Below, piece by piece: positions 1 through 43,235 of a stretch of DNA of 50,026 nucleotides (position 1 is the stretch's first letter; the number at the start of each line of letters is the position of its first letter). The translations under genes were made by a program, and so were the position numbers. The notes beneath the pieces were generated by a model that had not been told where the DNA came from, did not search any database, and saw only the letters and a list, made by a program, of their open reading frames with translations. Source of the DNA: Octopus sinensis (Eukaryota). The stretch spans positions 1 to 50,026 of the forward strand of contig NW_021834287.1 in the NCBI RefSeq assembly GCF_006345805.1. The letters run 5' to 3'.

Positions 1-110
1 GTAAGCATGAGTACTAGGTTTACAAAGAATAAGTGCCGAGGCCGATTAGTTCGACTAAGGGCAGTGCTCCAGCCTGGCCACAGACAAATGACTGAAGCGA
101 ATAAAAGAAC
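1..110 (+). mobile_element. 3' end of SINE family A (cut by window edge)
   Basis: Matches the 3' half of the fuller copies at 10507, 12424 and 40390 (agtactaggtttacaaagaataag...ccagc-tggcc-cag-caaatgactgaa). Confidence 0.8.
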
Positions 111-405
111 ACACACACAGTCACGTTCGCATTTGTGTTTACTTTCTCAAACCATTTACGATCAAAAATGTCTCACGTTTCATTTATTTTCACGGAAGAG
201 ACGAAAGATTTCCCCTCATTATTGTTCTCCTTCCTCCTCCTCAACTTCTCCTTTCTTTCTCTCTTGGCAGGGGCTACGCATGTAGAGAAAAGGGATCTTC
301 CTGATTTAAAACGCCCTAAACACACACTATGTCCCATGGATACTCTTTCAACTCCATTAGTTGTTCAGAGCCCCAAGAAAGGGTATTAAATATATACAAG
401 CGCTT

Positions 406-620
406 AAGGCGGCGAGCTGGCAGAATCGTTAGCGCACCGGGCGAAATGCTTAGTGGTATTTCGTCTGCGTTACGTTGTGAGTTCGAATTCCGCCGAGGTC
501 GACTTTACTTTCATCCTTTCGGGGTCGATAAATTAAGTACCTGTTACGCACTGGGGTCGATGTAATCAACTTAATCCGTTTGTCCCCTCCATGTTTAGCC
601 CCTTGTGGGTAATAAAGAAA
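406..620 (+). mobile_element. SINE family B copy
   Basis: aaggcggcgagctggcagaatcgttagc...gagttcgaattccgccgaggtcgac...gccccttgtggg; GTTCRAATTCC B-box-like motif; similar copies at 950, 12856 and 42220. Confidence 0.75.
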
Positions 621-853
621 CATATATACACCGTTTTTAAGGGTCAGTTTTTCTCTGCTTCCATGGGTCAACTGAGACTTCATTTGAGGCAGCTTTTCTC
701 GGGTTAGATGCTCTATTTCCAAGCAGGCTAATATTTTCTCTACCCTAACAAACTACAGACAGCCAAACTATGCTTTTTTATCTATCACTGGAGATAAGGC
801 AAGACGACTACACACACACACACATTCAAATATTTGTGTGTATATGCATGCAC

Positions 854-893
<40 letters not shown>

Positions 894-949
894 ACTCACT
901 CACACGCACACATGACAGCGGTGGGTGAAGGTTGTGTTATGGGACGGGA

Positions 950-1150
950 AGGCGGCGAGCTGGCAGAAACGTTAGCACGACGGGTGAAATGCGTTCCGAG
1001 TTCAAATTCCGCCGAGGTCGACTTTACCTTTCATCCTTGCGGGTCGATAAATAAGTACCAGTTACGCACTGGGGTCGAGTAATCGACTTAATCCGTTGTC
1101 TGTCCTTGTTTGTCCCCTCAATGTTAGGCCCCTTGTGGGTAATAAAGAAT
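950..1150 (+). mobile_element. SINE family B copy
   Basis: Same head and tail as 406-620. A further degenerate copy follows at about 1210-1420. Confidence 0.75.
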
Positions 1151-1433
1151 TAAAAATTATTATTATTATTATTATTATTGTTGTTGTTGTTATTATTGTT
1201 ATCATTATTGAGGTGGCCAACTGGCAGAATTATTAACACACTGCACAAAATATTTATCGGTATTTTGTCTGTCTTTACATTCTGAGTTCAAATGCTGCTG
1301 ATGTCGACTTTCTCTTTCATACAAGGGCCCATAAACTAAGTACCAGTCACACACTGCGGGGAGGGATCAATGTAATCAACTTATCCACTCCCCTAAAATG
1401 GCTGCCTTTGTGGAAAATTTTGAAACATTATTA

Positions 1434-1465
<32 letters not shown>

Positions 1466-1472
1466 TATTACT

Positions 1473-2048
1473 ATTGAGTGAGAGAGCAGTGCATGCCATC
1501 AAAGTGACACTGGAGTAAAATATATGAAGCCCAATATACCCATCATGACTACCCGTCTGATAAGGTACACCAGGCACATGCATCACACCATATGTGGCGC
1601 GACATATGATCTCATATCAAGTAAACAGCACATGACCTTGCAGGTGAGGCCAGTTAGAATTTTCTTCTTGTCGAGTAACCCATCCAGCTGAAAAGGTCCC
1701 TGAATAAGGTTTGTTTAAGGATGTTGAATGAACCACCCAGGTTTCCAGATGTGAATTATTCAAACCCCAAAGAATCCCTCTCAACACATGGCTATGATGC
1801 TCCCCCACTACTTCTGCTCGTGATCAGAGATGCACATATCGTCAGCCACTAAGGGACATGCTCAACTGGTTATTGTCAAACAACGGACAAGCAAATCTGT
1901 GGTATTGAGCAGAATATTTGCTGTAGCCTATCTTTTATACCAAGACAAACATGTACATGTAAACACTTCCAATCATTAAAATCAGAGCCTGAGAGCCACT
2001 GCTGGTACTGCATCAGGGAATACCTGGAACTGCATCAGGGCATACCTG
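1473..2048 (-). mobile_element. ~560-bp non-coding repeat embedded in (AAT)n tracts, copy 1
   Basis: Highly similar to 9574-10131 (same orientation) and 32871-33430 (inverted). ATT runs on both sides. Short duplication ctgcatcaggg-atacctgg at 2009-2048. Confidence 0.85.
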
Positions 2049-2049
2049 G

Positions 2050-2162
2050 TTGTTATTATTATTATTATAATTATTATTATTATTATTATTATTATTATAA
2101 TTATTATAATTATTATTATTATTATTATTATTATTGTAGTTATTATTATTATAATTATTATA

Positions 2163-2198
<36 letters not shown>

Positions 2199-2200
2199 CT
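2050..2200. repeat. (ATT)n microsatellite
   Basis: Direct inspection. Confidence 0.95.
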
Positions 2201-2214
2201 TTACTATGTTCATG

Positions 2215-3570
2215 TTCATACCATTTATCCGTATGTTTCAAATCCTAGCTTTCTACAAAGCCCCCAGTGGATTAACTCTCTTTAGATTGTCGTGTCTTTT
2301 CTAGTATTCTTTCTGTGCCAACATGCTACATTCACTTACTACATGAGTAACACTTTCCACTTTTGATTTGCATAATCTACATTGGGAATCTACTTGGTTT
2401 TTGTCTATTTTTTGCTTTTATCCAATTAGTCCTTAATGCTTGATCTTATGCAGCTACTAACAAACTTTCTGTCTCCCTCTCCAGCTTCCCTTTCTGCAGC
2501 TATAACCATGTCTTACAACTACTTTTGCTGCAACTAACTTTGGGAATCTTCTCTTGTCATTCAGATAATTTCTAGGGGTTTTTTTTTCTGGTTTTTAACT
2601 TCATTTGGGTTTTTGTTTTCCCTATGTCTTGCTGTGACTCTAGCATATTTTAGTAAATTTTCTTCCCTATTACCTACATAGGAGTCTATATCTACTTTAG
2701 CTAACTCCACGCTGCCTTCAACTGATGTTAACCTTCTTCCGCCTTCCCTTCTAGGGAGGTATAATCTTGCTTCTCTTGCCCCTGGGTGGAGTCCTCCATT
2801 CATATTAAATTCCTTCCTAGTTCTTCTGTCTAGCCTTGCTAATTCAGGTTTTGTCCAATCTACAAAAGCTGCTGAGTATCTAAGTAATGATGCTGCCCAG
2901 CTTTGATCTCATTCGCTTCCTCACCCTTCTGATGTATTCCTTCTCAATTTTCCTTTTCATTTCTATAGTTAGTACCTTGTCAGATTCTAATAAATATTCA
3001 GATACTTATAACTCTCTCCTCCTTTCAATGATTTCAATGTCTGGCTATCTGGTAATTCGATGCCTTCACTGTCGACTACCCGTCCCCTTCTCATAACTAA
3101 TATTGCACACTTATCTATACCAAATTTCATACCTATGTCTTTTCTGGAGAGTCTTGCAGTCTGTATTAAGGAATCTCTCTCTTTTTCATTCTGACTAAAA
3201 ACCTTCAGATCATCCATGTATAGTAAACGGTTAATTGTTCCCTTACTATTTCTGAGCTGATACCCTGCCTTTGCCTTCTTAATACTGAACTGAAGGGGAT
3301 CAAACATAAGACAAATATTAAAGGGGACAAGTCCCCACAGAAAATTCCTCTTTTAAACTTTTCCTAAGAGTGTGTCACCTGTGCAGAGATCTATTTTTCC
3401 ATTTCTTCATACTATAGCTTATTAATTCTCTTATGTTGTCTGCTATACTGAATATACTCAAGCATTCACTTATCCATGAGTGTGGGATCATGTCACAGGC
3501 TTTCCTGTCTTTCATCTCATTCTTTGTTTCCATCTGATGTTTCGATATGAAATATTGTAACAAGAAGTCG
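2215..3570 (-). mobile_element. Degenerate R4/Dong-type (REL endonuclease) non-LTR retrotransposon fragment
   Basis: Broken ORFs with DMIPHSWI (RT), RLLYMDDLKVF, GMKFGIDKCA, YKYL and LHP..RLYLPRREGGR motifs; several stops and frameshifts; ends at the (ATT)n tract. Confidence 0.85.
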
Positions 3571-4003
3571 TGGTTTTAATTTCTACCAATAATATCTGTA
3601 GAAGTAACCTCCACAAAATATTTATATTCTTTTTACTACAAAACTTTTCACCATCACTTATATTCAGTCAATAAAGATAATGGTGTATTTATATCTTCAA
3701 GTTTTATTTCTAATGATTATTCCATTGGAAACAGTTTAAATGTTTAACTTCACTGTCAAATAAACAATTTGTTTAATATATTTAATGAAATGTGTGTTTT
3801 CCTTGAAATTGTTTGAATGAATCAAGTAAATATTATTTTATCAAAAACCTTTCACAAAACTAATAAATTTTTCACTTTATTTCAGCTTTCATGTAAAAAT
3901 TAGTGAATTTTGAAGAGATAAATTGTATTCCAAAGGAAGAAAACAAAATCCACAGAAAAGAATATATTTAACAGAAAAAAGATAATAATTCTATATTCAT
4001 AAA

Positions 4004-7000
4004 ATGGAGAAGATTAATGCAGAAAACAAAATGTTGGCTCTCATTCCTGCCACAGTCCGTGATACAACAGCAATTCACAAGGAAACTACACCAGTTCTTC
4101 CCCAAATATTATATACACGAAACACAAAGAAATCTGAAGAGGAGGAAACGCAAAAGACAAGGAAACTTGAAGAATGGGAAAAGTCCATGTTACCAAGCTT
4201 TCTTCATATTGTGACATGTTACCGAGCAGTAATCAAAACAGACCACATCAATACGTTTATCGATTATGTAAAGGATAATTGTAAGCGCATGGATTTAGAT
4301 GGACCTTGTATTTTACATAATGTCAAACGTAAAATGCAAAGGTTTCTGGAATTTACTAAACAACATAATGATTTTGTTCACCAAAACCTTGATTGGTTTC
4401 AACAAAGACTCTTTGACATTTATGTCACCTGTAACCCATACAACCACAAGACCATTGAACCACCAAAAGTAACCACAAAATTTCGGCCTCTTCGACCAGC
4501 TGTGACCAGAGAAGCACGGATTGAGGAATCTGGAGAAGAATTGGACGAAAGCATAATATCCAATATTATTGTCATACAGGAGGGAATGGTGACATATTCC
4601 CAACATTATATGACAATATGTTGTGTGACAAGAGACGGTGACAAAAATGTGGTTCATTGCCCGTCTTCTGTCACAAACTTTACCAGAATCGGTGAAGACA
4701 TGGTTCTGGCGACTCTGCCCTTCCAAAAAAGGATTCTTATTATCAGCCCCACAAGTATTAAGTTTCAAACAATACAGTTGGGATTCTATTTGGTTTCTTA
4801 CTTGGAACATTCTACACTTATAGGCGCAGAAATGTTTGGTAAGACCATTTACCAATTTAATTGGGAGGAAAATAGAGTTGAATATGAATTTATTACGAAC
4901 GAAATACCAACAGATATTGCTGTAGGGGTCCAGAATATACTCGTAATATCATTTCTCAGTATTAACAGAGTAATCTGTTACAAACTGGATGGCCAACAGC
5001 TATGGGAGGTAGAGACTCATTCTCTGGACCTCCCTAGCAAAATCTCTCTGTACCAAAACTATTTCTATGTCCTCCAGGGACAAATTATTTATAGAATTTC
5101 GGCTAAAGGTGGTGTGACAAGGAGGGACATTGGCAGGAAATGCCGCTCTATTTCTGTTGCTAAAGATACTATTTTGGTAACAGATTATTTTGGCAAACCA
5201 CTTGCCATTGAAACAAATAAAGACTTTTGGCCCAAACTGTCATACAACCACCAGCTACATACCCCCAGTTTGAAAGACCATATTTATATTGAGGATTGCT
5301 ACAACATTACAAATATTCTACCTATGTCTACATCTTCTATATTAATAATTTACAAAAACAAGAAAGCTAAATTATTCACTGATAACGGGGAAATAATTAA
5401 CCAAAATAATTCAGTTTTCCTTGGGCTTCCTTCTTTCTGTTGTAGAATAAACGCAAACAGATTCCTGGTATTTTATCCTGAAATGAAAGGATTTCAGAAT
5501 ATCACCTGTCCTGAACTAAGAAAAGGCCTTTTAATAAAGGTTCAAACTGGTTACATGAAAATATGTCATATTGTATCAAATAAGTGTCTTGCTGTGACCA
5601 CCACTGAAAACAAAAGCGAGGTCCATATCCTCTTGATCAACGAAGATAAAGTTGACATTGCAGAAAGAATTTCTCTGGGACATCATAATGTCAGCATTGC
5701 TGCAACTCCAATTAATTTTGTAGTCGTAGATGGAAACGAAAATAAAATGGTATTTTATTCCACATGTGGTGAAGAACTTTTTCAAAAATACCTTCCATTC
5801 TATGGCTACCCTCATCACATCTACTCTGATAATGTTTATTTCTATGTCCTCTTCAAGAGACACTCTATTCTCAGATGTTACGATCTATATGGAGAAATTA
5901 AATGGCAATGGAAACTACCTTTCCCTGTTCACCCTCACATTGCTGTTTTCCAAGGAACTGTTTATGTCCCGGACACTCAACTCAACAGGGTTCTTCTTTA
6001 CAAGTATCAAGACTGGTCGTCTGGATGTTGTTTACATATGAAAAATCCTTATATCAGAAATCTAAATCTACGACTCAAAGAAAAGGAGAAAGACAAAGTT
6101 GTCATTGGTGAAATATGTAATCTGGCCGATGAACAGTTGGTGGTGTCAGACATCAACCATGATTGCTTGTTGTACATTTCTAAAGAAGGAGACATTGTGT
6201 CTAGATTATCTCTGCCGTCTACAGCCACAGATATATATCGATGGGATTCTAATCATATAGGGGTCACATTACCCCTACAGAAACAATTAAGGGTCATTGG
6301 AAACCTATCAAAGACAGTGATAAGTGTATCATTAGGGCAGCCTTATTTACGGGCATGTAAGATGGGTGAAGGTAAAATTATTTGTTATTGTGATAAACCA
6401 TCACTTTTAAATATTTTAGCCATCAATTATTATAATAGAGTTGAAGTAATTAAGACAATTAATATCCCTGTTTTTGTGAAATCGTTATCAATAGAAAAAG
6501 AAACACAAAAGCTGTTAATTGTCACTAGGGGAAAAGCATTTCAGTATAACACAACAATAGGTGGTGGTGGTCATGGCACTGGTGATCATCATCGTTGTAG
6601 TATTAAGATGGTCCCCAGTGTTTTAATGTCCCAAGTGAAACGTCCCCTCAGTCTCCAAGGTGGATCTATTGACCAAACATTTGTTTATCTTATAGACGAC
6701 AGCCGTATGTTTGCTATAAACGATCATAATTTGTTGGTTAATGATCTCGTTAAAAATAATCAACTTAATTATTATATCGATCTGGTGGATGTATTTTCCA
6801 GAAACATTTCTGTCAGTGAAATGTTGTCTTCCACTTTATATCTACAGGATCTGACAGTTTCTGATAAAGCCAGACATATTCCTCTCCGTCAACATTTGGG
6901 AGACAAAGAGCGAGTGGAGATCAAATGTTTGGTTCTGACTGGAAATAATCTGATTGCAGGATGGGACGAGAAGAATGGAAACATTAAGATATTCACATAT

Positions 7001-8299
7001 GATGGTCAACTTGTGGGTTCTATCAAATTCAGTTTTTATAAATATATTAAAATGTGTCGATGGCAGTCAAACACACTGGTCATTACGAATTGGGATGGTT
7101 TAGATATTGATTACCAAATGTTGACATTAAAGGTGGAATTTCCATTGTCATTGGTGGTTTGCCAGACAAGAAATGAATATAAATGTGTGGCTTCTTTATC
7201 AAACAATCAACTGGTTTGTAGCAAATTGGGACAGAGAGATGGACGTAGCTTATATTTTGTTGATATTGATGAAACACATTCGAATGTGAATGAAATAAAA
7301 AAAAAAAAAATACCTGAAACATTATTACTTAGAGACGAATATCATCAAATTTATATTAATGACATCAATGGTATTAAAGTTACAGCTGACGATGACATCA
7401 TTGTCTACAACACAAGATTCATCATTTTCTTCGACAGTGATGGTCAATATTTACATTCAGTTAGACACTACAGGAAGGCTGATGTTCCTACAGATGACAG
7501 GATGACAACTGCTGACAATTATTTCTACATTTATGGTGTGTGGGATAAATATGTTAATTTAACACAATATCATAACATTTTGTGTTTGACCCAGACTGGG
7601 GAATACGAGAGAATATTTTTAAATAAAAGAATTTATAAAGATAAAGTAGAGTTCTTCAATATAGACTGTAAAGGACCAAGGTTTGTTGGAAGCCACTCCA
7701 AAATTGGAAGAAGGAATGAATTGTATGTTGAAGGGTTATTTATGGCTAATCGAGACAGCTTCCCGGTTGCTCGTTTACAAACAGACAAATTTCCTGTTCA
7801 AGTAAAAGATTATGATGTCTCTGAGGAAGGAAAGACAGTTGTGTGTGAAAAAGCCAATAATGGAAATGTTAAAATATTCGATGAAGACGGCCAGTTGCTA
7901 TGTCACAGAAATGTTGCAAGTTTAGTTGGTGGTGTGTGTTTTACACAAGAATCACACATAATGGCCACGGTTCCTAAAAGGAAAGAAATATTTCAACTGA
8001 ATCGAGAAGATTTGCAGAATTATCAAGTTTGGCAAAGTCAAGTGCCTTATGGTGTAATATGGAGAAAAGTGAAGAATATTTACTTGTGTGTACATATTGA
8101 ATTGATTGAATGTCATTGCATAAAGATTGATGGGGACCAAGTGAACATTCTGGAATCAGTGTCTTTATTAAATCTTGATTCTGGTCTTCGTTTCCCTTCC
8201 ATTACATCTCAGATGAACAAGGAAATATTCACTGATGAATTGATTAGTAAATCGAAATATAGTGAAGGAGATGAAGGAAGAAGTATATCAGTGAAATAA
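4004..8299 (+). CDS. Large intronless protein (1431 aa): short helical N-terminal region plus multiple tandem NHL/6-bladed beta-propeller-like units (mollusc TRIM/NHL-like)
   Basis: 4.3-kb uninterrupted ORF in AT-rich DNA; in-frame stop at 3983-3985 upstream of the ATG. Recurrent blade motifs: LVVSDINHDCLLYISKEGDIV, GWDEKNGNIKIFTYDGQLV, NGNVKIFDEDGQLL, VICYKLDGQQLW, ATLPFQKRIL / VTLPLQKQL / ATVPKRKEI. The fold call is by motif recognition only. Confidence 0.8.
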   Translation: MEKINAENKMLALIPATVRDTTAIHKETTPVLPQILYTRNTKKSEEEETQKTRKLEEWEKSMLPSFLHIVTCYRAVIKTDHINTFIDYVKDNCKRMDLDGPCILHNVKRKMQRFLEFTKQHNDFVHQNLDWFQQRLFDIYVTCNPYNHKTIEPPKVTTKFRPLRPAVTREARIEESGEELDESIISNIIVIQEGMVTYSQHYMTICCVTRDGDKNVVHCPSSVTNFTRIGEDMVLATLPFQKRILIISPTSIKFQTIQLGFYLVSYLEHSTLIGAEMFGKTIYQFNWEENRVEYEFITNEIPTDIAVGVQNILVISFLSINRVICYKLDGQQLWEVETHSLDLPSKISLYQNYFYVLQGQIIYRISAKGGVTRRDIGRKCRSISVAKDTILVTDYFGKPLAIETNKDFWPKLSYNHQLHTPSLKDHIYIEDCYNITNILPMSTSSILIIYKNKKAKLFTDNGEIINQNNSVFLGLPSFCCRINANRFLVFYPEMKGFQNITCPELRKGLLIKVQTGYMKICHIVSNKCLAVTTTENKSEVHILLINEDKVDIAERISLGHHNVSIAATPINFVVVDGNENKMVFYSTCGEELFQKYLPFYGYPHHIYSDNVYFYVLFKRHSILRCYDLYGEIKWQWKLPFPVHPHIAVFQGTVYVPDTQLNRVLLYKYQDWSSGCCLHMKNPYIRNLNLRLKEKEKDKVVIGEICNLADEQLVVSDINHDCLLYISKEGDIVSRLSLPSTATDIYRWDSNHIGVTLPLQKQLRVIGNLSKTVISVSLGQPYLRACKMGEGKIICYCDKPSLLNILAINYYNRVEVIKTINIPVFVKSLSIEKETQKLLIVTRGKAFQYNTTIGGGGHGTGDHHRCSIKMVPSVLMSQVKRPLSLQGGSIDQTFVYLIDDSRMFAINDHNLLVNDLVKNNQLNYYIDLVDVFSRNISVSEMLSSTLYLQDLTVSDKARHIPLRQHLGDKERVEIKCLVLTGNNLIAGWDEKNGNIKIFTYDGQLVGSIKFSFYKYIKMCRWQSNTLVITNWDGLDIDYQMLTLKVEFPLSLVVCQTRNEYKCVASLSNNQLVCSKLGQRDGRSLYFVDIDETHSNVNEIKKKKIPETLLLRDEYHQIYINDINGIKVTADDDIIVYNTRFIIFFDSDGQYLHSVRHYRKADVPTDDRMTTADNYFYIYGVWDKYVNLTQYHNILCLTQTGEYERIFLNKRIYKDKVEFFNIDCKGPRFVGSHSKIGRRNELYVEGLFMANRDSFPVARLQTDKFPVQVKDYDVSEEGKTVVCEKANNGNVKIFDEDGQLLCHRNVASLVGGVCFTQESHIMATVPKRKEIFQLNREDLQNYQVWQSQVPYGVIWRKVKNIYLCVHIELIECHCIKIDGDQVNILESVSLLNLDSGLRFPSITSQMNKEIFTDELISKSKYSEGDEGRSISVK

Positions 8300-9465
8300 T
8301 TAGTAAAGGTAGATTTAAGGTGAGATGTGGTAATTACATAGCGGAGAGTAAGTCAGGAATTGATGAAATATCAGTGAGGAGACTTCCATATAGGATAGCA
8401 ATGGTCCCTCTTTCCATTCCTGCATTCGAGGAACCTGTTCATTATGATTTGTGGGACAGCAAGGACTGGAACAATAAACTAATTAAGTTAGATGAGAATG
8501 TGAGTGTGTTGATGTTTAGAAAAAGTGTCACCTTAATCAACACAACAACAGGTGACATACTGCAACATGAACAACTCCCACAACAACAACAACCAGCACT
8601 GAACATATTTCAGTGGACATTTGAATACATAAAGGCCTTCTTTTCCAAACAACAAACACAACATCAACAACAACCACAACATCAACAACCACTGGATATC
8701 TGTCGGTGGACAGATGAACATTTCATAGTCGTCTTTGGTAAAGAAATGATGGTCTTCGACAGGGATCTCCGTCGTTTAAAAACCATAAAAACTGAGAAAT
8801 ACTACAACACGATTTATAAATATAACGACAATCAACTCGTGTGTGGTGGTCATCATTTTAGAAACATACATGAAATGACAGGCTCAAGTGAGCTTTATTA
8901 CGTTTGCGAAGAGTCTGAAGCGAACGACTCTTATTATGTGGATGTGGTTGATATGAAAGATGGGAAATGTAAAGATGAAGTGTGTCGTGGAAAGAAGGGG
9001 AGGTGGAGAAGGATTGATGGAGATGCGAGGGTACTTGATGTAAGAGTCGCATCTTCTGGTGATGTGGTTGTTATGAGGAGGGAGCTGGAAATAGATAAGA
9101 CGGCAGATGATTTCTCGATTGTGGAATGGTTCAGTGAAAATTCGTTGGTCAGGAGGATAAGAATAGGAGAAAAAAACCAGAGGGGATATTATATTCAAAG
9201 ATGTCGTTTAGCCACAATTGGTGAATGTGTTTATATAACAGACAGACAGAACAATATTTTCCAAATACCTGGACATATTGAACAACAAACATCCGAAGAT
9301 ATTGAAATCCTGTCTTTGAAAAACGATGCAAAATATTTACTCCTCAGAACTGATGATAATGAAGTCTTTGAAGTTCTTGGTTTTGATGCTTCAGAAAATT
9401 CTTTCATGGTTTTTGGAATTATTCCTGGACGTCAATCTTTTGCTTTCTTTCATTATGACAAATAA
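8275..9465 (+). CDS. C-terminal continuation of the propeller protein in the -1 frame (track ORF 8320-9465, 381 aa)
   Basis: Frame is open from 8275 (after TGA 8272-8274) and overlaps the end of ORF1. Contains a further propeller-like unit (PLDICRWTDEHFIVVF...YNTIYKYNDNQLVCGG). AATAAA at 9461-9466 overlaps the stop. Confidence 0.7.
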   Translation, partial: RKKYISEIISKGRFKVRCGNYIAESKSGIDEISVRRLPYRIAMVPLSIPAFEEPVHYDLWDSKDWNNKLIKLDENVSVLMFRKSVTLINTTTGDILQHEQLPQQQQPALNIFQWTFEYIKAFFSKQQTQHQQQPQHQQPLDICRWTDEHFIVVFGKEMMVFDRDLRRLKTIKTEKYYNTIYKYNDNQLVCGGHHFRNIHEMTGSSELYYVCEESEANDSYYVDVVDMKDGKCKDEVCRGKKGRWRRIDGDARVLDVRVASSGDVVVMRRELEIDKTADDFSIVEWFSENSLVRRIRIGEKNQRGYYIQRCRLATIGECVYITDRQNNIFQIPGHIEQQTSEDIEILSLKNDAKYLLLRTDDNEVFEVLGFDASENSFMVFGIIPGRQSFAFFHYDK

Positions 9466-9573
9466 ATATCTTTAGAAATATTAAAATTTGATCTTGTTGT
9501 TATTGTTGTTGTTATTATTATCATTATAATAATTATTATTATTATTATTATTATTATCATTATTATTATTATT

Positions 9574-10131
9574 ATTGAGTGAGAGAGCAGTGCATGCCAT
9601 CAAAGTGACACTGGGGTACAAATATACGAAGCCCAGTACACCCATCATGACTACCCGTCTGATAAGGGTACACTAGGCACATGCATCACAACCATATGTG
9701 CGTGACATGGTGATCTCATATCAAGATAAACAGCACATGACCTTGCAGATGGGGCCCAGTTAGAATTTTCTTCTGGTCGAGTAACCCATCCCACTCAAAA
9801 GGCCCCTGAATAAGGGTTGTTTAAGGATGTTGAGCAAAACACCCATGTTTTCAGAGGTGAATTATTCAAACCCCAAAGAATCCCTCTCAACACATGGCTA
9901 TGATGCTCTCCCACTACTTCTGCTTGTGGTCAGAGATGCACATATCATCAGCCACCAAGGGACATGCTCAACTGGTTAAGGTCAAACAACTGACAAGCAG
10001 ATCTGTGGTTTTGAGCAGAATATTTGCTGTAGGTCATCTTTTATACCAAGACAAAGCAATGTACATGATAACACTTCCAATCAGTTAAGATCAGAAGCCA
10101 CGAGAGCCACTGCCTGGTACTGCATCAGGGC
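9574..10131 (-). mobile_element. ~560-bp (AAT)n-embedded repeat, copy 2
   Basis: attgagtgagagagcagtgcatgccatcaaagtgacac...gagagccactgcctggtactgcatcagggc; ATT/GAT runs on both sides. Confidence 0.85.
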
Positions 10132-10506
10132 ATTATTGTTATAATTATTATTATTATGATGATGATGATGAACGTTTTTTCCTTCTTTCTTCAAATGTTC
10201 TTCTTAGCACACAGCCAAGCCTGCGCCTATCTAAATGAGATTCAATTGAATTAAGTACTTCAATCAAGGCCCTTCGTAGGGTCGCAGTAATATCCACCAA
10301 CAACAATATTCTGTAAATATCCGGCTCCGTACAGAAGTAGCGGTCGAAAGCTATTCTCAGCGCTTTTGTAGCGAATCGGATCAGGTTGAGTGATGAAACC
10401 CGTTCTTCAGTTCTTCACTCAAGTATTCAATATTATACGATCAATCACATCGATGAAGGGTGGATTCCGAGACAGGAGAATAAATTATAAATGAATAAAT
10501 GAATAA

Positions 10507-10910
10507 TAGGCGCAGGTGTGGCTGTGTGGTAAGTAGCTTGTTTACCAACCACATGGTTCCGGGTTCAGTCCCGCTGCGTGGCATCTTGGGCAAGTGTCTT
10601 CTGCTATAGCCTCAGGCCGACCAAAGCCTTGAGAGTGGATTTGGTAGACGGAAACTGAAAGAAGCCCGTCGTATATATGTATATATATATATGCGTGTGT
10701 GTGTTTGTGTGTCTGTGTTTGTCCCCCTCCCCAGCATCGTTTGACAACCGATGCTGGTGTGTTTATGTCCCCGTTACTTAGTGGTTCGGCAAAAGAGCCC
10801 GATAGAATAAGTACTAGGCTTACAAAAGAATAAGTCCCGGGGTTGAGTTGCTTGATTAAAGGCGGTGCTCCAGCATGGCCACAGTCAAATGACTGAAACA
10901 AATAAAAGAG
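10507..10910 (+). mobile_element. SINE family A, full-length, with internal TA/TG microsatellite
   Basis: taggcgcagg.gtggctgtgtggtaag (A-box-like), ggttcagtccc (B-box-like), tail caaatgactgaaacaaataaaagag. Confidence 0.85.
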
Positions 10911-10959
10911 TATATATATATATAAATATATATATATTCTTTTCTTTTATTCTTTACTT

Positions 10960-11140
10960 GTTTCAGTCATTTGACTGTGGCCATGCTGGAGCACCGCCTT
11001 TAATCAAGCAAACTCAACCCCGGGACTTATTCTTTGTAAGACTAGTACTTATTCTGTCAGTCTCTCTTACCGAACCGCTAAGTGACGGGGGCATAAACAC
11101 ACCAGCATCGGTTGTCAAACGATGCTGGGGAGCAACAAGA
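10960..11140 (-). mobile_element. SINE family A, 3' half, tail-to-tail with the previous copy
   Basis: Reverse complement of about 10735-10905. Confidence 0.85.
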
Positions 11141-11149
11141 CACACAAAC

Positions 11150-11150
11150 A

Positions 11151-11231
<81 letters not shown>

Positions 11232-11276
11232 TAATATATATCTATGTATATATATATATAATATATATATATATAA

Positions 11277-11307
<31 letters not shown>

Positions 11308-11312
11308 AATAT

Positions 11313-11392
<80 letters not shown>

Positions 11393-11766
11393 GATATATA
11401 TATATATATAATATTATAATTATATACATATACATATATACGTGCATACACACACATATATATCGTTTTCGGCGTTAGAGTCTAATGAGACGTTGATGTG
11501 GTCAAGGCCTTTCTGGATGCGAGACCATTGGTCACTCTTGAAACGGTCATACTGCAACACCTCTGAATATCTTATTGTTTATTTTGATTATATATATATA
11601 CAATATAATATATATATATGTATATATATATGTATATTATATTAGTATATATATATATGTATATATATGTATGTATATATATATGTATATATATATATAT
11701 GTTATATATATATGTATAATATATATGTATATATATATATGTATATGTATATGTATATATATTATA

Positions 11767-11810
<44 letters not shown>
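11150..11810. repeat. (TA)n-rich microsatellite blocks
   Basis: Direct inspection; source of the spurious IYIY ORFs. Confidence 0.9.
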
Positions 11811-11811
<1 letters not shown>

Positions 11812-11814
11812 ACG

Positions 11815-11955
11815 TTTTACTCTTTTACTTGTTTCAGTCATTTGGCTGCGGCCATGCTGGAGCACCGCCTTTATTCGAGCAAATCGACCCCGGGACTTAT
11901 TCTTTGTAAGCCCAGTACTTATTCTATCGGTCTCTTTTGGCGAATCGCTAAGTGA
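11815..11955 (-). mobile_element. SINE family A, 3' fragment
   Basis: ttgtttcagtcatttggctgcggccatgctggagcaccgcc...cccgggacttattctttgtaagcccagtac. Confidence 0.8.
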
Positions 11956-12035
11956 CATACGACAGGCTTCTTTCAGTTATATTATTACACACACACACAC
12001 ACACACACTATATAATATATTAATATATATATATA

Positions 12036-12077
<42 letters not shown>

Positions 12078-12423
12078 ATACAGAGTATATATTTTTTTTC
12101 CGCGCCAATTTCCTGCTACTTAGTGTCCTGGGGTTCTGTCGTTTCGCCACAGTACACTAAGCAGTAACTTTTTCTTTTTTTACACAATATTAATAGGGAG
12201 ATTTAAGGGAAATAACTCTGCAAATTTACTTCTTAGTTATTTCCCTTTAACCAAATTTCAACTCATGCACACACGCGCGCGTACACACACACACACACAC
12301 ACCACACACACTCAGATAACCATTTGATGGCCTCTGGTGTTCCAAAGATTAATATTCGATGTACCTAAACCCGCTAGAAAAATCAGCCAAATCTCCCTCA
12401 ACACCCTACTGTCTTTTGTTGTA

Positions 12424-12596
12424 TAGGCGCAGGAGTGGCTGTGTGGTAAGTAGCTTGCTTACCAACCACGTGGTTCCGGGTTCAGTCCCATTGCGTGGCA
12501 TCTTGGGCAAGTGTCTTCTGCTATAGCCCCGGGCCGACCAATGCCTTGTAAGTGGATTTGGTAGACGGAAACTGAAAGAAGCCTGTCGTATATATG

Positions 12597-12635
<39 letters not shown>

Positions 12636-12837
12636 CTGTGTTTGTCCCCTAGCATTGCTTGACAACCGATGCTGGTGTGTTTACGTCCCCGTCACTTAGC
12701 GGTTCGGCAAAAGAGACTGATAGAATAAGTACTGGGCTTACAAAGAATAAGTCCCGGGGTCGATTTGCTCGACTAAAGGCGGTGCTCCAGCATGGCCGCA
12801 GTCAAATGACTGAAACAAGTAAAAGAGTAAAAGAGTA
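12424..12837 (+). mobile_element. SINE family A, full-length
   Basis: Same head and tail as 10507; tail (aaaagagt)2. Confidence 0.85.
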
Positions 12838-12855
12838 TATATACATACACATACA

Positions 12856-13088
12856 AAGGCGGCAAGCTGGCAGAGATGTTAGCACGTCGGGCGAAATGCT
12901 TAGCGGTATTTCGTCTGCCGTTACGTTGTGAGTTCAAATTCCACCGAGGTCGACTTTGCCTTTCATCCTTTCAGGGTCGATGAATTAAGTACCAGTTACG
13001 CACTGGAGTCAATGTAATCGACTTAATTCGTTTGTCTATCCCTGTTTGTCCCCTCTATGTTTAGCCCCTTGTGGGTAGTAAAGAAATA
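12856..13088 (+). mobile_element. SINE family B copy directly behind SINE A
   Basis: aaggcggcaagctggcagag...gagttcaaattcc...gccccttgtgggtagtaaagaaata. Confidence 0.8.
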
Positions 13089-13108
13089 TATATATATATA
13101 TATGTATG

Positions 13109-13163
<55 letters not shown>

Positions 13164-13529
13164 GTGGGGAGGTAGAGAATATCATTGAAATTCCTGCTAA
13201 AAATTCCCGAAAAAATGTTACGGAATGTTATTAAGACAATCCAAAATTAGTTAAATTCCAATTGAACAACGAGAGACGAGTGAAAAGCGTGTAAATATAA
13301 TCATATGATTCCACCGTATAGAAGAGGTGTGGGTTCGATTCACACTCATGCCAACACCCATTTTTTACCCAGCACACCCCACCCCCTTTTTACAACCACT
13401 ACTTCACCACGCGTTCTATTCTCTCCCTTTCTACCTCTATCTCCTTTTCAACCAAACCCACTTACATCTGCCTTCGCGACAAATCCTTCCACCATTCTCT
13501 CCCTCCACCCCTCTCTATCCCCCTGTATC

Positions 13530-14495
13530 GAAAGTAATGACAGCCTTTGAGAAAGAGGGAAAAACCTCCTTGTCGAAACGAAACTCCGGACAAAAACTAA
13601 AACTTTCAGATTGGGACCGTCGGACTCTTCGCGGATTGTTAGAAAGGATCACAAAAGTACAGCTCCCAAGATTACTGCAGAGTTTAATGACCACCTCGGG
13701 AACCTAGTTTCCACAAAAACTGTTCGCCGGGAGGTGTACAAAGCCGGATTTCACAGGAGGGCTGCAATCAGAAAACCTCTACTTTCAAAAACAACCGTTG
13801 CCAAGTGTTTAGAGTGGAGTAAAAACCCACAGAATTGGTCCCTAGAGAAGTGGAAGAATGTTATTTTCTCAGGCAAGTCATCATTTACCTTGTTTCCGAC
13901 CACCGGCCGAGTATATGTGTGGAGACAGCCAAAACATGCATTTGACCGAAACTGCCTTCTTCCAACTGTTAAACTTGGAGGAGGATCTGTGATGATCTGG
14001 AGTGGGGGCTATACCTTGGAAATCCGCCGGCCCATTGGTTTCCCTTCATGGCAGAATTAACAGTCAAGACTATTTAAGCATTTTATCTGATCAAATTCAT
14101 CCTATGGATGCGGAACTGTCTCCGGAGGGAAACACAATCTTTCAGGATGATAATGCACCAATTCACACAGCTAAATTTGTTACTGAATGGTACAAGGACC
14201 ACTCTAGTGAAGTTGAACATCTTATCTGGCCACCACAGTCCCCAGATCTCAAAATTATTGAACATTTATGGTGCATATTAGAAAAACAAGTAAGGAGTCC
14301 ATATCGTCCACCATCATCACTACAAGAACTGGAGACTGTTTTAGCTGAAGAATGGACAAAAATTCTCTTTGGAAACAATTCAAACTTTGTATGGGAATTC
14401 AAGCTATAATTACTGCCAAAGGCGGTCCTACCCCTATTATAATAAAATTGTTTGAAATTTTAAGGTGTTTCTATTATTTTGTCCACTCCCTGTAT
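13530..14495 (+). mobile_element. Tc1-like transposon (DD36E spacing), 5'-truncated, frameshifted transposase
   Basis: ORFs 13611-14060 and 14002-14409: HTH region (STKTVRRE..KAGF..R.A.RKPLLS), W.NVIFSGKSSF (first catalytic D lost), FQDDNAPIH, WPPQSPDLKIIEHLW. 3' TIR-like end ggtgtttctattattttgtccactccctg followed by TA. Confidence 0.85.
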
Positions 14496-14550
14496 TTATG
14501 CATGTATGTATGTATGTATATATGTATGTATGTATGTATGTATAAGGATT

Positions 14551-14587
<37 letters not shown>

Positions 14588-14923
14588 GCATATAAACATA
14601 AATCTTTAGTTAAATATATTCAATGAGACTATTATATACTGAATTTATATTGAGTGTTCAATTGTATCAAAGTTTTAATACTATCAAAGTATTTATATAT
14701 TTAATCCGAGCGATTATATACATATATATTTTTAAATAATATATTATTATTGATATTAGGAAATCAATATCAAAATTCCTCAGAAAGATATACACGTGTG
14801 AAAAATGATTGTTGTATTAAAAATATCATCGTTATATTTTTTATCTTATATTTAATCTTTCTATCATATGTAATTTTCTAGATGGTGTAATTTAATTTTC
14901 ATTTTGAATTGATAAAAGGTGGG

Positions 14924-14960
<37 letters not shown>

Positions 14961-15056
14961 GAGGGAGATAAATTAATATTAATTTTAATATCAATTTAAA
15001 ACCAGTAGTCTAGCATACAAAAAATCTGAGAAGTCAGAGAAAATTCTAATATATGT

Positions 15057-15534
15057 GTATATTGGCAGGGCTGGACTGCTAGGTAGTCGGCCAAATGCTA
15101 GAAACAGATCATCAACGATCAAACTACAAAGGAAATTCTCTAGAGGAAAAATTCAGCGAACACCAGAACCAAATTTGGCGGGCAGGACAGATGAAAAATT
15201 TATATAAAAAAAAAACAGAATTAAATGCATACCTCGGTTTCGGCCTTTAACAAAAGAATTACTTACATAATTCAAATGTCCGTGGCTTCATCAGTGCATT
15301 CGTTCCGTGTGAATGCAAACTACAAAAGTAACCCCAGCTTTCTGTGCCAAGACAGACACGTGCTTAGTTTTACCGATTACATTAGGGATAAAATTTCAAA
15401 TGTCTTGGTTCGCCAAATTTGGTTCTGGTGTTCGCTGAATTTTTCCTCTAGAGAATTTCCTTTGTAGTTTGATCGTTGATGATCTGTTTCTAGCATTCGG
15501 CCGACTACCTAGCAGTCCAGCCCTGCCAATATAC
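15057..15534. repeat. Fold-back inverted repeat, 124-bp arms (15057-15180 / 15411-15534), 230-bp spacer
   Basis: Arms are reverse complements with one mismatch seen (ggccaaatgc vs ggccgaatgc). A diverged single copy of the arm lies at about 46740-46850. Confidence 0.9.
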
Positions 15535-15708
15535 ATATATATATATATATATAAATATATATATATATATGATATATGATCTCACTACCCATATAAGTTA
15601 ATAAGTTAATAAGGTAATAAGTATTCTGGAATGGTGCCCAAGAAACGGACAAATTGAGAAACAGACAGACAGACAAACAGACAAGTTATGGTCTTCATTA
15701 AAACATCT

Positions 15709-15714
15709 TTTATT
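15709..15714 (-). terminator. Putative poly(A) signal of the EMI-EGF gene
   Basis: AATAAA on - followed by a TG-rich downstream tract (tctgtttgtctgtctgtctgt), about 345 nt after the stop at 16057. Confidence 0.5.
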
Positions 15715-16056
15715 TAATTGATAACGTGTGAAAATATACAAAAACACTTCATATATTAAGATGTACGTGTGTGCGCATGTGTGTATGGTTGTCTGATGTA
15801 AGGTGGGACATCAGTGACTAACAGACAAGCAGAGAGACGAACTAGTAATAAAGTTTATGTCTGAAATCTGGAGAGGAGCTGAGATGACCCGGTGAGGAGG
15901 TCATGTGGAAAGGAGAAGACTACCCAGGAATAATGTCCTGGTGTGATTATATGTTTGAGAGGGTTTTGACTATGTGTATCTAGGAGTATATTTTTGAATG
16001 TTTACTATAACAGTAATTGTGGCAGTAGTTGTTGTTGTTGATGTTTAGCTGTTGTT

Positions 16057-16274
16057 TTATTTTTTCGATTGTTTCCGTAGCGATGGCGAAAACTTTGGTA
16101 TGACTTCTCTGTTGTTTCGCGGTTTGCTTTTCGGGTTTCCTCTGTACATCCCGTAGCACCAGTTTCCATGAGGATGAAACCCACCGGGGCAAGCGCAGTA
16201 GTAGGATCCATATGTGTTAACACACCTGTAAGGATGAGGACAGTAATGGATTCCGCACTCGCATTCATTAACGT
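16057..16274 (-). CDS. Exon 4 of secreted EMI-like/cbEGF gene: calcium-binding EGF domain plus basic tail
   Basis: Acceptor ttttattttcag|AC (phase 1). D-VNECECGIHYCPHPYRCVNTYGSYYCACPGGFHPHGNWCY fits the cbEGF consensus D-V-N-E-C...C-x-N-x-x-G-S-Y-x-C-x-C-x-x-G-F. Confidence 0.85.
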
Positions 16275-16386
16275 CTGAAAATAAAAATAGGTAAAAATAC
16301 ATGAGTAAAAATATTTAAAAAATTAGAAATATTAAAAGAAAAAACCCATAGCCCTTTCCGTAAAGGGTTCAAATAAAAGCCTAGGG

Positions 16387-16587
16387 CAGTGGTTTTCAAC
16401 CAGGGTTCCACCAGTACAGTTCAGGGGTTCCGCAAGAAGTTACAAAAATGCTAAAATCGACAGTAATTTTTAATTCTCCTGTGCAGATATGTGTGCATAA
16501 GACTATTAAATTATTGCACAGGGGTTCCTCGAGCCAGTGGAATGTTTCCTTGGGGTTCCGCTCTAGTAAAAAGGTTGAAAAGCACTG
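16387..16587. mobile_element. hAT (Charlie-like) MITE, 201 bp, in intron 3
   Basis: 15-bp TIRs CAGTGGTTTTCAACC / GGTTGAAAAGCACTG (14 of 15 match); perfect 8-bp TSD GCCTAGGG at 16379-16386 and 16588-16595. Confidence 0.9.
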
Positions 16588-18170: not shown

Positions 18171-18241
18171 GTTTAGTGTCCAAAGAAGGAAAATATACAT
18201 ATATGTATATTTCGTATTTGCTGTATTTACTATATTTAATG

Positions 18242-18540: not shown

Positions 18541-18768
18541 TATATTTAATGTATGTGATGTGTCTAATTTGTTTTGTCTGTATTATTTGCTTTGTACCCA
18601 CTCAACCCGATCCATCTGATTGCCTTCCTTCACTTTGTAGAAAGATGTTCTGCATAGACATTGTCGGTGTCCAAGTTTGAATCTTTTAAGAACGATTGTC
18701 TTCTATTCGGAGAACATCTGGATTTCATTTGTGGACTATATATCTGTGTGTATATGTATGTACTGATA

Positions 18769-18804
<36 letters not shown>

Positions 18805-40562: not shown

Positions 40563-40595
<33 letters not shown>

Positions 40596-43199: not shown

Positions 43200-43235
<36 letters not shown>

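What the first reader, a model, noticed from the sequence alone, without database searches (positions are those of the whole stretch)
4004..9465. Giant single-exon tandem beta-propeller protein (about five to six NHL-like units)
Seen: 5.4 kb of coding sequence with no intron in an otherwise microsatellite-littered region. After a ~170-aa helical N-terminus come repeated ~230-280-aa units that start with recurring blade motifs (e.g. SNIIVIQEGMV..., TNILPMSTSSIL..., GEICNLADEQLVVSD..., KCLVLTGNNLIAGWD..., KDYDVSEEGKTVVCEK..., PLDICRWTDEHFIV). No signal peptide, TM segment, RING or B-box is visible. Known: molluscs carry expanded TRIM-like (B-box/coiled-coil/NHL) families, usually with one propeller, often linked to innate immunity or RNA binding. 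Inference: a multi-propeller array built by internal duplication and strongly diverged, possibly a cephalopod-specific intracellular recognition scaffold or a retro-copied or shuffled TRIM-NHL derivative.
Basis: partly seen in the sequence, partly recalled or inferred. Interest (0 to 1): 0.75.

Follow-up and report, generated by a model that had tools for sequence, protein, structure and literature searches.

The report
Octopus giant six-propeller NHL-like protein gene
The window holds one copy, interrupted by a single missing base, of an uncharacterised octopus-only gene family whose intronless 5.4-kb genes encode a helical head followed by six NHL-type beta-propeller units related to mollusc TRIM-NHL proteins. 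The architecture is unusual and the function is untested.

Summary
The 5.4 kb is two ORFs, 4004-8299 and 8284/8320-9465, in different frames. A single G is missing at 8291/8292 relative to intact paralogs. The paralogs are continuous single-exon ORFs of 1662-1913 codons in Octopus vulgaris, O. bimaculoides and Argonauta hians (O. sinensis members not checked for introns).

AlphaFold2 predicts a helical N-terminus followed by all-beta domains. Units 1, 2 and 4 are confident, with 23-24 strands each, which fits six blades. Foldseek returns only generic multi-propeller proteins.

Pfam finds nothing above threshold. A family profile searched against 1.84 billion proteins hits only octopods, plus a weak tail of RING/B-box + NHL proteins from cuttlefish and mussel. 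Profile-profile comparison matches all six units in register to those NHL propellers (94-98% probability; reversed control E at least 0.03).

No RING, B-box, transmembrane segment, terminal repeats or poly(A) were found. About 500-700 bp upstream is co-duplicated, so recent copies arose by DNA duplication, not retroposition. Pairwise dN/dS is 0.5-0.85, with stretches at or above 1.

Verdict: a new variant of a known kind, a TRIM-NHL-derived six-unit propeller array restricted to octopods in the data searched. This copy is either recently disabled or mis-assembled. Function is inferred only (a non-catalytic multivalent binder).

The parts
3508..4003 (+). Upstream non-coding region duplicated together with the gene. 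It probably holds the promoter or 5' UTR. A possible splice acceptor (tttcag) lies at about 3880-3886.
   Evidence: Nucleotide homology to O. vulgaris paralog loci begins about 500 bp upstream of the ATG, and 660-1390 bp upstream between some paralog pairs. In-frame stops lie 8 codons upstream of the ATG. The promoter and acceptor roles are inferred, not tested.
4004..4543 (+). N-terminal region, aa 1-180. Long helices span aa 52-143 (nt 4157-4432), followed by a disordered linker.
   Evidence: AF2 secondary structure gives helices at 52-94, 100-121 and 129-143, with low pLDDT. There is no match to NHL propellers or to the coiled coil of TRIM-like relatives. This region varies between paralogs: homology to O. 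bimaculoides P0010 starts only at +441 nt. dN/dS is 0.74-0.98.
4544..5287 (+). Propeller unit 1 (aa 181-428), a six-bladed beta-propeller.
   Evidence: AF2 pLDDT is about 80-88, with 23 strands in groups of four. hhalign against the mollusc B-box/NHL propeller profile gives 96% probability, E 3e-9, in register. This unit has the lowest dN/dS, about 0.2.
5288..6097 (+). Propeller unit 2 (aa 429-698), a six-bladed beta-propeller.
   Evidence: AF2 pLDDT is about 80-86, with about 24 strands. hhalign against the NHL-type profile gives 96%, E 2e-9.
6098..6907 (+). Unit 3 (aa 699-968). The first half is NHL-like and is the most conserved stretch of the family. The second half has diverged and carries a GGGGHG low-complexity insert and short helices.
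   Evidence: hhalign gives 98% probability, E 8e-15, but only over columns 3-148, about three blades. The invariant columns cluster at aa 713-804. AF2 confidence is low, pLDDT 30-55.
6908..7789 (+). Propeller unit 4 (aa 969-1262), a six-bladed beta-propeller with a fast-evolving second half.
   Evidence: AF2 pLDDT is about 75-90, with 23 strands. hhalign gives 98%, E 5e-15, over 209 columns. Pooled dN/dS is 1.1-1.3 at aa 1069-1187.
7790..8296 (+). Unit 5 (aa 1263 to about 1400), a partial NHL-like unit, followed by a purine-rich low-complexity linker. This is the end of ORF1.
   Evidence: hhalign gives 96%, E 2e-9, over columns 5-147 only. AF2 confidence is low. The linker varies in length between paralogs.
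8289..8299 (+). Frameshift site. One G is present at 8291 where paralogs have GG, which gives an immediate TAA stop at 8297-8299.
   Evidence: DNA alignment with four intact paralog genes. The protein consensus of the paralogs reads straight through this point.
8335..9465 (+). Unit 6 (fused aa 1441-1816) plus the stop codon, read in the +1-shifted frame. Blade 1 is at about aa 1486-1517 and blade 2 starts at PLDICRW (nt 8689).
   Evidence: AF2 shows beta cores with pLDDT up to 94, separated by disordered inserts. hhalign gives 94%, E 1e-7, over 191 columns. tblastn confirms the frame.
8593..8685 (+). A 31-codon Gln-rich insertion found only in the window copy, in the loop between blades 1 and 2 of unit 6. 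Part of it is a CAA/CAC-type short tandem repeat.
   Evidence: The insertion is absent from all 15 aligned paralogs. Tandem and direct repeats lie at 8570-8691.

Best explanation
The window carries one member of an octopod-restricted multigene family of genes with an intronless coding region. The proteins are about 1,660-1,910 aa.

Shown here:
- The protein has a variable helical N-terminal region and then six tandem units. Each unit is homologous to the single six-bladed NHL-type beta-propeller of mollusc RING/B-box-NHL (TRIM-NHL-like) proteins.
- The six-unit layout predates the Argonauta-Octopus split.
- One subfamily has multiplied by DNA-level duplication, mostly along one small chromosome, with many fragmentary copies.
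- The window copy differs from intact paralogs by a 1-nt deletion that splits it into ORFs of 1431 and 393 codons.

Inferred:
- With no signal peptide, transmembrane segment, RING or B-box, the product is an intracellular protein without E3 ligase activity.
- It would work as a multivalent binding scaffold. Each propeller would offer a ligand-binding face, as NHL domains do for RNA or protein partners, and the helical head may mediate self-association.
- The fast-evolving parts of units 4-6 would supply ligand diversity.

Which ligands it binds, and whether the role is immune or antiviral, is not known.
For: - ORFs and frameshift.
- Family membership: 36-39 clusters, all Octopus, with E = 0. 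Searching 1.84 billion representatives found only 32 hits, namely octopods including Argonauta hians plus a weak NHL tail.
- Single coding exon in every member looked up: 5406, 5397, 5613, 4989, 5025, 4989 and 5742 nt for 1801, 1798, 1870, 1662, 1674, 1662 and 1913 aa.
- Collinear end-to-end homology to distant members: P0038 40%, Argonauta P0041 36%, P0044 28% identity.
- P0038 and P0044 are conserved at 90% identity or more across three Octopus species.
- Fold: AF2 models show confident all-beta domains of 23-24 strands. Foldseek top hits are tandem-propeller proteins, E 1e-21 to 1e-10.
- NHL link: the weak hits P0060-P0065 carry RING, B-box and NHL domains. Relatives of P0061 carry RING + B-box + filamin + NHL. 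hhalign of all six units against their propellers gives 94-98% probability, E 1e-7 to 5e-15, against reversed-control E of 0.03 or more. The shared blade 1/2 motif is visible.
- Selection: dN/dS is 0.50-0.85 overall, about 0.2 in unit 1 and 1.1-1.3 in parts of units 4, 5 and 6.
- No terminal inverted or long terminal repeats. The upstream 0.5-0.7 kb is co-duplicated.
Against: - No Pfam model, NHL included, reaches threshold on the window protein. The PDB sequence search gives TRIM71 NHL only at E = 1.1.
- Units 3 and 5 match only about half a propeller and are poorly modelled, so 'six propellers' may overstate the count.
- The alignment used for AF2 was shallow, with 36 closely related sequences.
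- No expression, localisation or binding data were available.
- dN/dS of 0.5-0.85 is also compatible with relaxed constraint rather than diversifying selection, and no formal site test was run.
- The window copy itself may be a dead gene.
Confidence: 0.72

Rival explanations
1. The window copy is a genuine pseudogene or a truncated allele. The missing G is real, so only the 1431-aa product ending after unit 5 could be made, and unit 6 is decaying.
For: - There is a 1-nt deletion relative to four intact paralogs.
- A 31-codon insertion in unit 6 is seen in no other paralog.
- The family has many fragmentary copies of 150-1000 aa on the same O. vulgaris chromosome, which fits birth-and-death turnover.
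- No gene with the ORF1 product is on record.
Against: - The downstream frame stays open for 393 codons (chance about 5e-13) and still aligns to paralogs. Any lesion is therefore very recent.
- A one-base miscount in a GG run is a plausible assembly error.
- No reads were available to check.
Confidence: 0.5
2. The ORF belongs to a transposable element or an endogenous virus, which would explain why it is intronless, multicopy and surrounded by repeats.
For: - There are dozens of copies and fragments, and the coding region is intronless.
- LINE fragments lie nearby.
- Some gene models are fused to a DUF4371 or C2H2 zinc-finger part.
Against: - No terminal inverted or direct repeats flank the unit.
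- No transposase, reverse transcriptase, integrase or capsid domain is present in the protein.
- Homology between copies ends 50-300 bp after the stop codon, without a poly(A) tail.
- Stable 1:1:1 orthologues on large chromosomes are 90% identical or more across species.
- dN/dS is below 1.
- Hits to viral structures are only generic propellers at 15% identity or less.
Confidence: 0.04
3. It is a divergent orthologue of a conserved WD40-type multi-propeller scaffold such as IFT-A subunits, Utp21/WDR36, EML/CFAP-type axonemal proteins or DDB1.
For: These are the best Foldseek matches, E 1e-21 to 1e-10. There are sub-threshold Pfam hits to WDR90 and ANAPC4 WD40 domains in a few members.
Against: - Sequence identity is 7-12% and TM-scores are 0.1-0.3.
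- The confident units have about 23-24 strands, which fits six blades, not seven.
- No WD40 Pfam hit reaches threshold.
- The family is absent outside octopods.
- The sequence-level affinity is to NHL propellers.
Confidence: 0.03
4. The family began as a retrocopy of a spliced TRIM-NHL-type mRNA. This would explain the intronless coding region, and the propeller would then have been multiplied internally.
For: All members are intronless, including the most divergent ones and the Argonauta member. The nearest relatives are TRIM-NHL-like proteins.
Against: - The recent copies spread by DNA duplication that includes upstream sequence, and they lack a poly(A) tail.
- Any founding retroposition is too old to leave marks.
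- The intron structure of the mollusc relatives was not examined.
Confidence: 0.15

Closest known systems
TRIM-NHL proteins (RING, B-box, coiled coil, optional filamin, one NHL propeller; e.g. TRIM71/LIN-41, Brat, TRIM2/3/32)
   Same: The propeller units are homologous to the NHL-type six-bladed propeller of cephalopod and bivalve RING/B-box-NHL proteins. Both are intracellular, with no signal peptide or transmembrane segment.
   Different: The octopod protein has no RING and no B-box, so E3 ligase activity is not expected. It has six tandem units instead of one C-terminal propeller. The Pfam NHL model does not reach threshold. The N-terminal helices show no detectable similarity to a TRIM coiled coil.
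Mollusc B-box/NHL-like expansions (P0060, P0062, P0064; a B-box orthogroup expanded in bivalves is listed in PMC8382680)
   Same: They share the blade 1/2 sequence motif (hydrophobic-x-D-x-N-x-x-I-K ... P-x-D-I ... T-L-P-x-x-K-Q-L). Both are lineage-specific expansions. P0062 already has two tandem propellers.
   Different: Those proteins are 280-660 aa with one or two propellers and usually B-boxes. The octopod family has a fixed six-unit layout of 1.7-1.9 kaa that is conserved from Argonauta to Octopus.
Multi-propeller scaffolds (LRP4/LRP6/megalin YWTD arrays, DDB1, IFT-A subunits, Utp21, COPI beta')
   Same: Several beta-propellers sit on one chain. These are the best structural matches. 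By analogy, the protein could act as a multivalent docking platform.
   Different: There is no sequence relationship (7-12% identity). YWTD arrays are extracellular and separated by EGF domains. The WD40 scaffolds have seven blades and are ancient 1:1 orthologues. This family is young, multicopy and fast-evolving.

Membership tests
NHL-repeat six-bladed beta-propeller (Pfam PF01436, beta-propeller clan) | Six blades of four antiparallel strands, about 40-45 aa each | tested here: met
   The AF2 secondary structure shows 23-24 strands in groups of four for units 1, 2 and 4 at pLDDT 75-90. Units 3 and 5 are uncertain. Blades were counted from the strand list, not from coordinates.
NHL-repeat six-bladed beta-propeller (Pfam PF01436, beta-propeller clan) | Pfam NHL model scores above its gathering cut-off (20 bits) | tested here: not met
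   No NHL hit on the window protein even at E up to 10. The divergent member P0044 reaches 18.5 bits.
NHL-repeat six-bladed beta-propeller (Pfam PF01436, beta-propeller clan) | Significant profile-level homology to proteins that do pass the NHL model | tested here: met
   The only non-family hits of the family profile are NHL proteins, E 1e-5 to 5e-4 library-wide. hhalign of all six units gives 94-98% probability, E 1e-7 to 5e-15, in register, against reversed-control E of 0.03 or more.
TRIM / RBCC-NHL E3 ligases | N-terminal RING finger | tested here: not met
   No RING family hit in the window protein or in 16 paralogs.
TRIM / RBCC-NHL E3 ligases | One or two B-box zinc fingers | tested here: not met
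   No B-box hit. The relatives P0060 and P0061 do have them.
TRIM / RBCC-NHL E3 ligases | Coiled coil between the B-box and the C-terminal domain | tested here: inconclusive
   Long helices at aa 52-143 are predicted with low confidence. There is no profile similarity to the coiled coil of P0061. PDB sequence hits are only to coiled-coil-like helices at E 0.3 or more.
WD40-repeat propeller proteins | WD40 repeat signature and, typically, seven blades | tested here: not met
   No WD40 Pfam hit at threshold. The strand counts fit six blades. Foldseek similarity is generic, at 7-12% identity.
Processed retrocopy | Homology starts at the transcript start, with a 3' poly(A) tract and target-site duplications | tested here: not met
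   Paralogs share 0.5-1.4 kb of upstream sequence. Homology ends 50-300 bp after the stop at a (TTA)n microsatellite, with no poly(A) tract and no flanking direct repeats.
Transposable-element or viral gene | Terminal repeats and an enzyme or capsid domain typical of mobile elements | tested here: not met
   No TIR or LTR. No such Pfam domain. Only generic propellers among viral structures.

The most novel reading that the evidence does not exclude
The family would be an octopod-specific intracellular recognition system. It would be a birth-and-death array of ligase-less, six-propeller NHL proteins. Their fast-evolving propeller faces (units 4-6) would bind diverse RNAs or proteins of viruses or transposons. 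This would parallel TRIM-based restriction but work by multivalent sequestration or by recruiting separate effectors. The slowly evolving founder genes (P0038 and P0044 types) would keep a housekeeping role.
Probability: 0.2. Interest if true: 0.7.

Novelty: new variant of a known kind. Interest (0 to 1): 0.45.

Why it matters
Cephalopod genomes are known for a few large lineage-specific expansions, notably protocadherins, C2H2 zinc fingers and GPCRs. This family would be a further expansion, and the literature searches here found no description of it. All database entries are labelled 'uncharacterized' or 'hypothetical' and carry no Pfam domain.

The work here assigns the family a fold and an origin, the TRIM-NHL-type propeller multiplied six-fold with the ligase module lost. 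It also shows two evolutionary modes: conserved founder genes and a fast-turnover cluster on one small chromosome.

A chain of six NHL-type propellers is, to my knowledge, not a described architecture. If the units bind RNA or pathogen components, as other NHL domains do, the family would be a tractable entry point into octopus innate immunity or RNA regulation. For this particular window the practical message is modest: an unannotated, frameshifted copy.

Tried and rejected
- Pfam on both ORFs and on 16 paralogs found nothing at threshold. The only sub-threshold hits were DUF4934, WDR90 and ANAPC4 propeller hints. The precomputed PF23381 hit on P0026 was not reproduced.
- A PDB sequence search with the family profile found nothing significant. 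TRIM71 NHL scored E = 1.1.
- Reading 8291-8319 as a 29-nt GT..AG intron that would restore the frame was rejected, because those bases encode residues conserved in paralogs.
- A search for a second copy in the window found none.
- A search for TIRs, LTRs or target-site duplications around the gene found none.
- Foldseek against viral structures returned only generic propellers.
- A search with a broader family profile (A6) added no new taxa.
- An exact-product look-up of ORF1, meant to identify the source assembly, found nothing on record. The species of the window is therefore undetermined. dS is 0.19-0.21 to three O. vulgaris copies and 0.34 to O. bimaculoides P0010.
- Comparing the N-terminal helices with the coiled coil of a TRIM-like relative gave no signal.
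- Literature searches by LOC identifiers, by octopus + NHL repeat, by octopus + beta-propeller + expansion, and by TRIM/NHL/B-box + mollusc + expansion found no paper on this family.
Full report
**1. What is in the sequence**

On the + strand an ATG at 4004 opens a reading frame that runs to a TAA at 8297-8299 (1431 codons). A second frame, shifted by one base, is open from 8284 to a stop at 9463-9465 (393 codons). At the local 36% GC these lengths have chance probabilities of about 1e-45 and 5e-13, so both are coding sequence. In-frame stops lie 8 codons upstream of the ATG.

A DNA alignment with four intact paralog genes locates the cause. The paralogs read ATCAGGTGAAATAA and the window reads ATCAGTGAAATAA. 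One G is missing at 8291/8292, and this brings TAA into frame.

The GT..AG-bounded 29 nt (8291-8319) that would also restore the frame encode residues conserved in the paralogs (GEIIGKGRLKV), so they are not an intron. The window copy also carries a unique 31-codon Gln-rich insertion (8593-8685) that none of 15 paralogs has.

**2. Relatives**

The fused 1816-aa product finds 36 protein clusters, all from Octopus vulgaris, O. sinensis and O. bimaculoides. Identities are 47-83%, and all are labelled hypothetical or uncharacterised with no Pfam domain. The window's own product is not on record, so the source species remains open.

A profile of aa 1-1190 was scored against 1.84 billion representative proteins and gave only 32 hits. 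The strong hits are Octopus proteins and two Argonauta hians proteins of 1913 and 1925 aa. Two divergent members, the P0038 and P0044 clusters, are 1:1:1 orthologues in the three Octopus species. They share at least 90% identity and sit on large chromosomes. They are collinear with the window protein over its whole length, at 40% and 28% identity; Argonauta P0041 is at 36%. The six-unit layout is therefore older than the Argonauta-Octopus split.

Every member whose locus was fetched is a single coding exon.

Most copies of the close subfamily, together with many fragments of 150-1000 aa, lie on one 29.2-Mb O. vulgaris chromosome (OX597841.1). They sit at scattered positions, for example 9.57, 10.30 and 22.66 Mb.

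Between copies, nucleotide homology covers the ORF, 0.5-1.4 kb upstream and 50-300 bp downstream. There is no poly(A) tract and no terminal repeats. The recent spread was therefore by DNA duplication, not by retroposition or transposition.

**3. Fold**

AlphaFold2 was run on aa 1-974 and on aa 961-1816, each with a 36-sequence alignment.

- Aa 52-143: long helices at low confidence.
- Aa 144-182: a disordered linker.
- Unit 1 (183-410): all-beta, pLDDT 75-90, 23-24 strands in groups of four.
- Unit 2 (425-668): all-beta, pLDDT 75-90, 23-24 strands in groups of four.
- Unit 4 (973-1243): all-beta, pLDDT 75-90, 23-24 strands in groups of four.
- Unit 6: confident beta cores (pLDDT up to 94) interrupted by disordered inserts.
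- Units 3 and 5: low confidence.

The strand counts for units 1, 2 and 4 fit six four-stranded blades.

Foldseek against the PDB returns tandem-propeller proteins as best matches: IFT-A subunits, Utp21, axonemal WD proteins, LRP4/megalin, DDB1, COPI beta' and AIP1. E-values are 1e-21 to 1e-10, but identity is 7-12% and TM-scores are low. This confirms the fold class and nothing more specific. Viral structures give only generic propellers.

**4. Which propeller class**

Pfam finds nothing at threshold. However, the six weakest hits of the exhaustive profile search (E 1e-5 to 5e-4) are not random.

- P0061 (Acanthosepion pharaonis) has RING + B-box + NHL.
- P0060 has B-boxes + NHL.
- P0062, P0063, P0064 (Mytilus edulis) and P0065 carry NHL-repeat matches: P0062 and P0063 above Pfam's 20-bit cut-off, P0064 (19.2 bits) and P0065 (17.1 bits) just below it.
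- Relatives of P0061 have the canonical RING + B-box + filamin + NHL set.

Three different units (1, 3 and 4) produced these hits independently.

Profile-profile comparison of each unit with an alignment of those propeller domains gives the following matches, each starting at the same position of the propeller:

| Unit | Probability | E-value |
|---|---|---|
| 1 | 96% | 3e-9 |
| 2 | 96% | 2e-9 |
| 3 | 98% | 8e-15 |
| 4 | 98% | 5e-15 |
| 5 | 96% | 2e-9 |
| 6 | 94% | 1e-7 |

The reversed-sequence control gives E of 0.03 or more, and the N-terminal region does not match.

A multiple alignment shows the shared motif. Blade 1 reads like x-G-Q-L-V-V-x-D-x-N-x-x-x-I-K-x-F-x-x-D-G. Blade 2 reads like P-x-D-I-C-x-W ... 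V-T-L-P-x-x-K-Q-L-x-x-I.

The units also match one another (best E 2e-8 to 1e-5), as expected from internal duplication. Units 3 and 5 align to the NHL profile only over about the first 145 columns, roughly three blades, and unit 5 is only about 140-180 aa. I therefore count four well-supported full propellers and two partial or uncertain ones.

**5. Constraint**

Pairwise Nei-Gojobori dN/dS between the window copy and four paralogs is 0.50-0.64, and it reaches 0.85 between the two youngest O. vulgaris copies. Pooled 60-codon windows range widely:

- About 0.2 in the core of unit 1.
- 0.3-0.7 over units 2-3.
- 1.1-1.3 at aa 1069-1187 (unit 4), 1308-1367 (unit 5) and 1645-1759 (unit 6).

This shows that the sequence has been under protein-level constraint, with relaxed or diversifying stretches. 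It is not a formal test of positive selection. The uneven dS along the gene also suggests gene conversion.

**6. Explanation**

Shown: this is an intracellular-type protein, with no signal peptide or transmembrane segment (maximum hydropathy 1.62, inside a beta strand). It is built from a helical head and six NHL-type propeller units. It belongs to a family limited to octopods in the data available. It descends from the propeller of TRIM-NHL-like mollusc proteins and lacks the RING and B-box.

Inferred from what NHL propellers do elsewhere (RNA binding in Brat and TRIM71/LIN-41, protein binding in TRIM2/3/32; my knowledge, not tested here): it is a non-catalytic multivalent binding scaffold. 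The helical head may drive self-association, and the fast-evolving units may diversify ligand choice. An immune or antiviral role is possible by analogy with expanded B-box families in bivalves; a B-box orthogroup with an interferon-related annotation is listed as expanded in PMC8382680. There is no direct evidence for that role here.

The window copy is either a very recent pseudogene or truncated allele, or an assembly miscount of a GG run. I cannot tell which without reads.

**7. Rivals**

- A mobile-element or viral origin is contradicted by the lack of terminal repeats and element-type domains, by stable conserved orthologues, and by dN/dS below 1.
- A divergent WD40 housekeeping scaffold is contradicted by the blade number, the lineage restriction and the sequence affinity to NHL.
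- A founding retroposition of a TRIM-NHL mRNA cannot be excluded, because all members are intronless. It is not needed for the recent copies.

**8. Novelty**

I found no paper on this family. The fold is known. The six-unit, ligase-less NHL architecture and its octopod-specific expansion are a new variant of a known kind.

**Rest of the window**

The rest of the window is repeat-rich. It holds LINE fragments, a 2.4-kb (TGTA)n array and several copies of a roughly 430-bp interspersed repeat.

Noticed in passing
window 43192-45547: A 2.36-kb (TGTA)n microsatellite of about 594 copies. It accounts for the 820-aa 'ORF' on the minus strand (43124-45586, no Pfam hit) and for the extreme GC skew of 0.67 at 44-46 kb.
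   Followed up: yes
window 27768-30533 (+), 35100-36215 (+), 2987-3307 (-): Non-LTR retrotransposon remains. One is an APE endonuclease plus reverse transcriptase split over two ORFs by a frame break. Another is a zf-RVT ORF. A third is a short RT fragment carrying YMDD, 0.7 kb upstream of the propeller gene on the opposite strand.
   Followed up: partly
window 10506-10937, 12420-12853, 40380-40809, 46215-46627 (-); partial copies at 43047-43240, 45516-45770, 10911-11174 and 11772-11956: A roughly 430-bp interspersed (SINE-like) repeat in at least four full copies. It is 90-94% identical to copies flanking the O. vulgaris paralog locus L001 (for example L001 18983-19420).
   Followed up: no
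window 11151-11812; 41693-41812; 2053-2197; 9500-9576: Long simple repeats: (AT)n of 660 bp, (TGG)40, and (TTA)n both upstream and directly downstream of the gene. Homology between paralogs ends at the downstream (TTA)n.
   Followed up: no
L004 (O. bimaculoides CM046605.1, positions 1-18809): The paralog P0010 lies within the first 19 kb of a 127-Mb chromosome record, at the very end of the chromosome. Its N-terminal region is not alignable with the window's: nucleotide homology starts only 441 nt into the ORF. The family therefore has at least two or three different N-terminal heads.
   Followed up: partly
L003 19390-22767; proteins P0006, P0098: C2H2 zinc-finger genes sit next to family members on O. 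vulgaris OX597841.1. Some database gene models fuse a family member to a zinc-finger array (P0006, 2053 aa) or to a DUF4371 part (P0098, 2120 aa). These are probably annotation chimeras.
   Followed up: partly
window about 8262-8283 versus paralogs (alignment A5, columns 98-112): The purine-rich (GGA/GAA/GAG) stretch just before the frameshift encodes a Gly/Asp/Arg linker. It varies in length by multiples of 3 nt between paralogs, and the window has the shortest version. It behaves like a coding microsatellite.
   Followed up: partly
whole gene: Synonymous divergence between paralogs varies about ten-fold along the gene: dS is 0.08 at aa 537-596 and 0.76 at aa 237-296. This suggests mosaic gene conversion between copies.
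   Followed up: no
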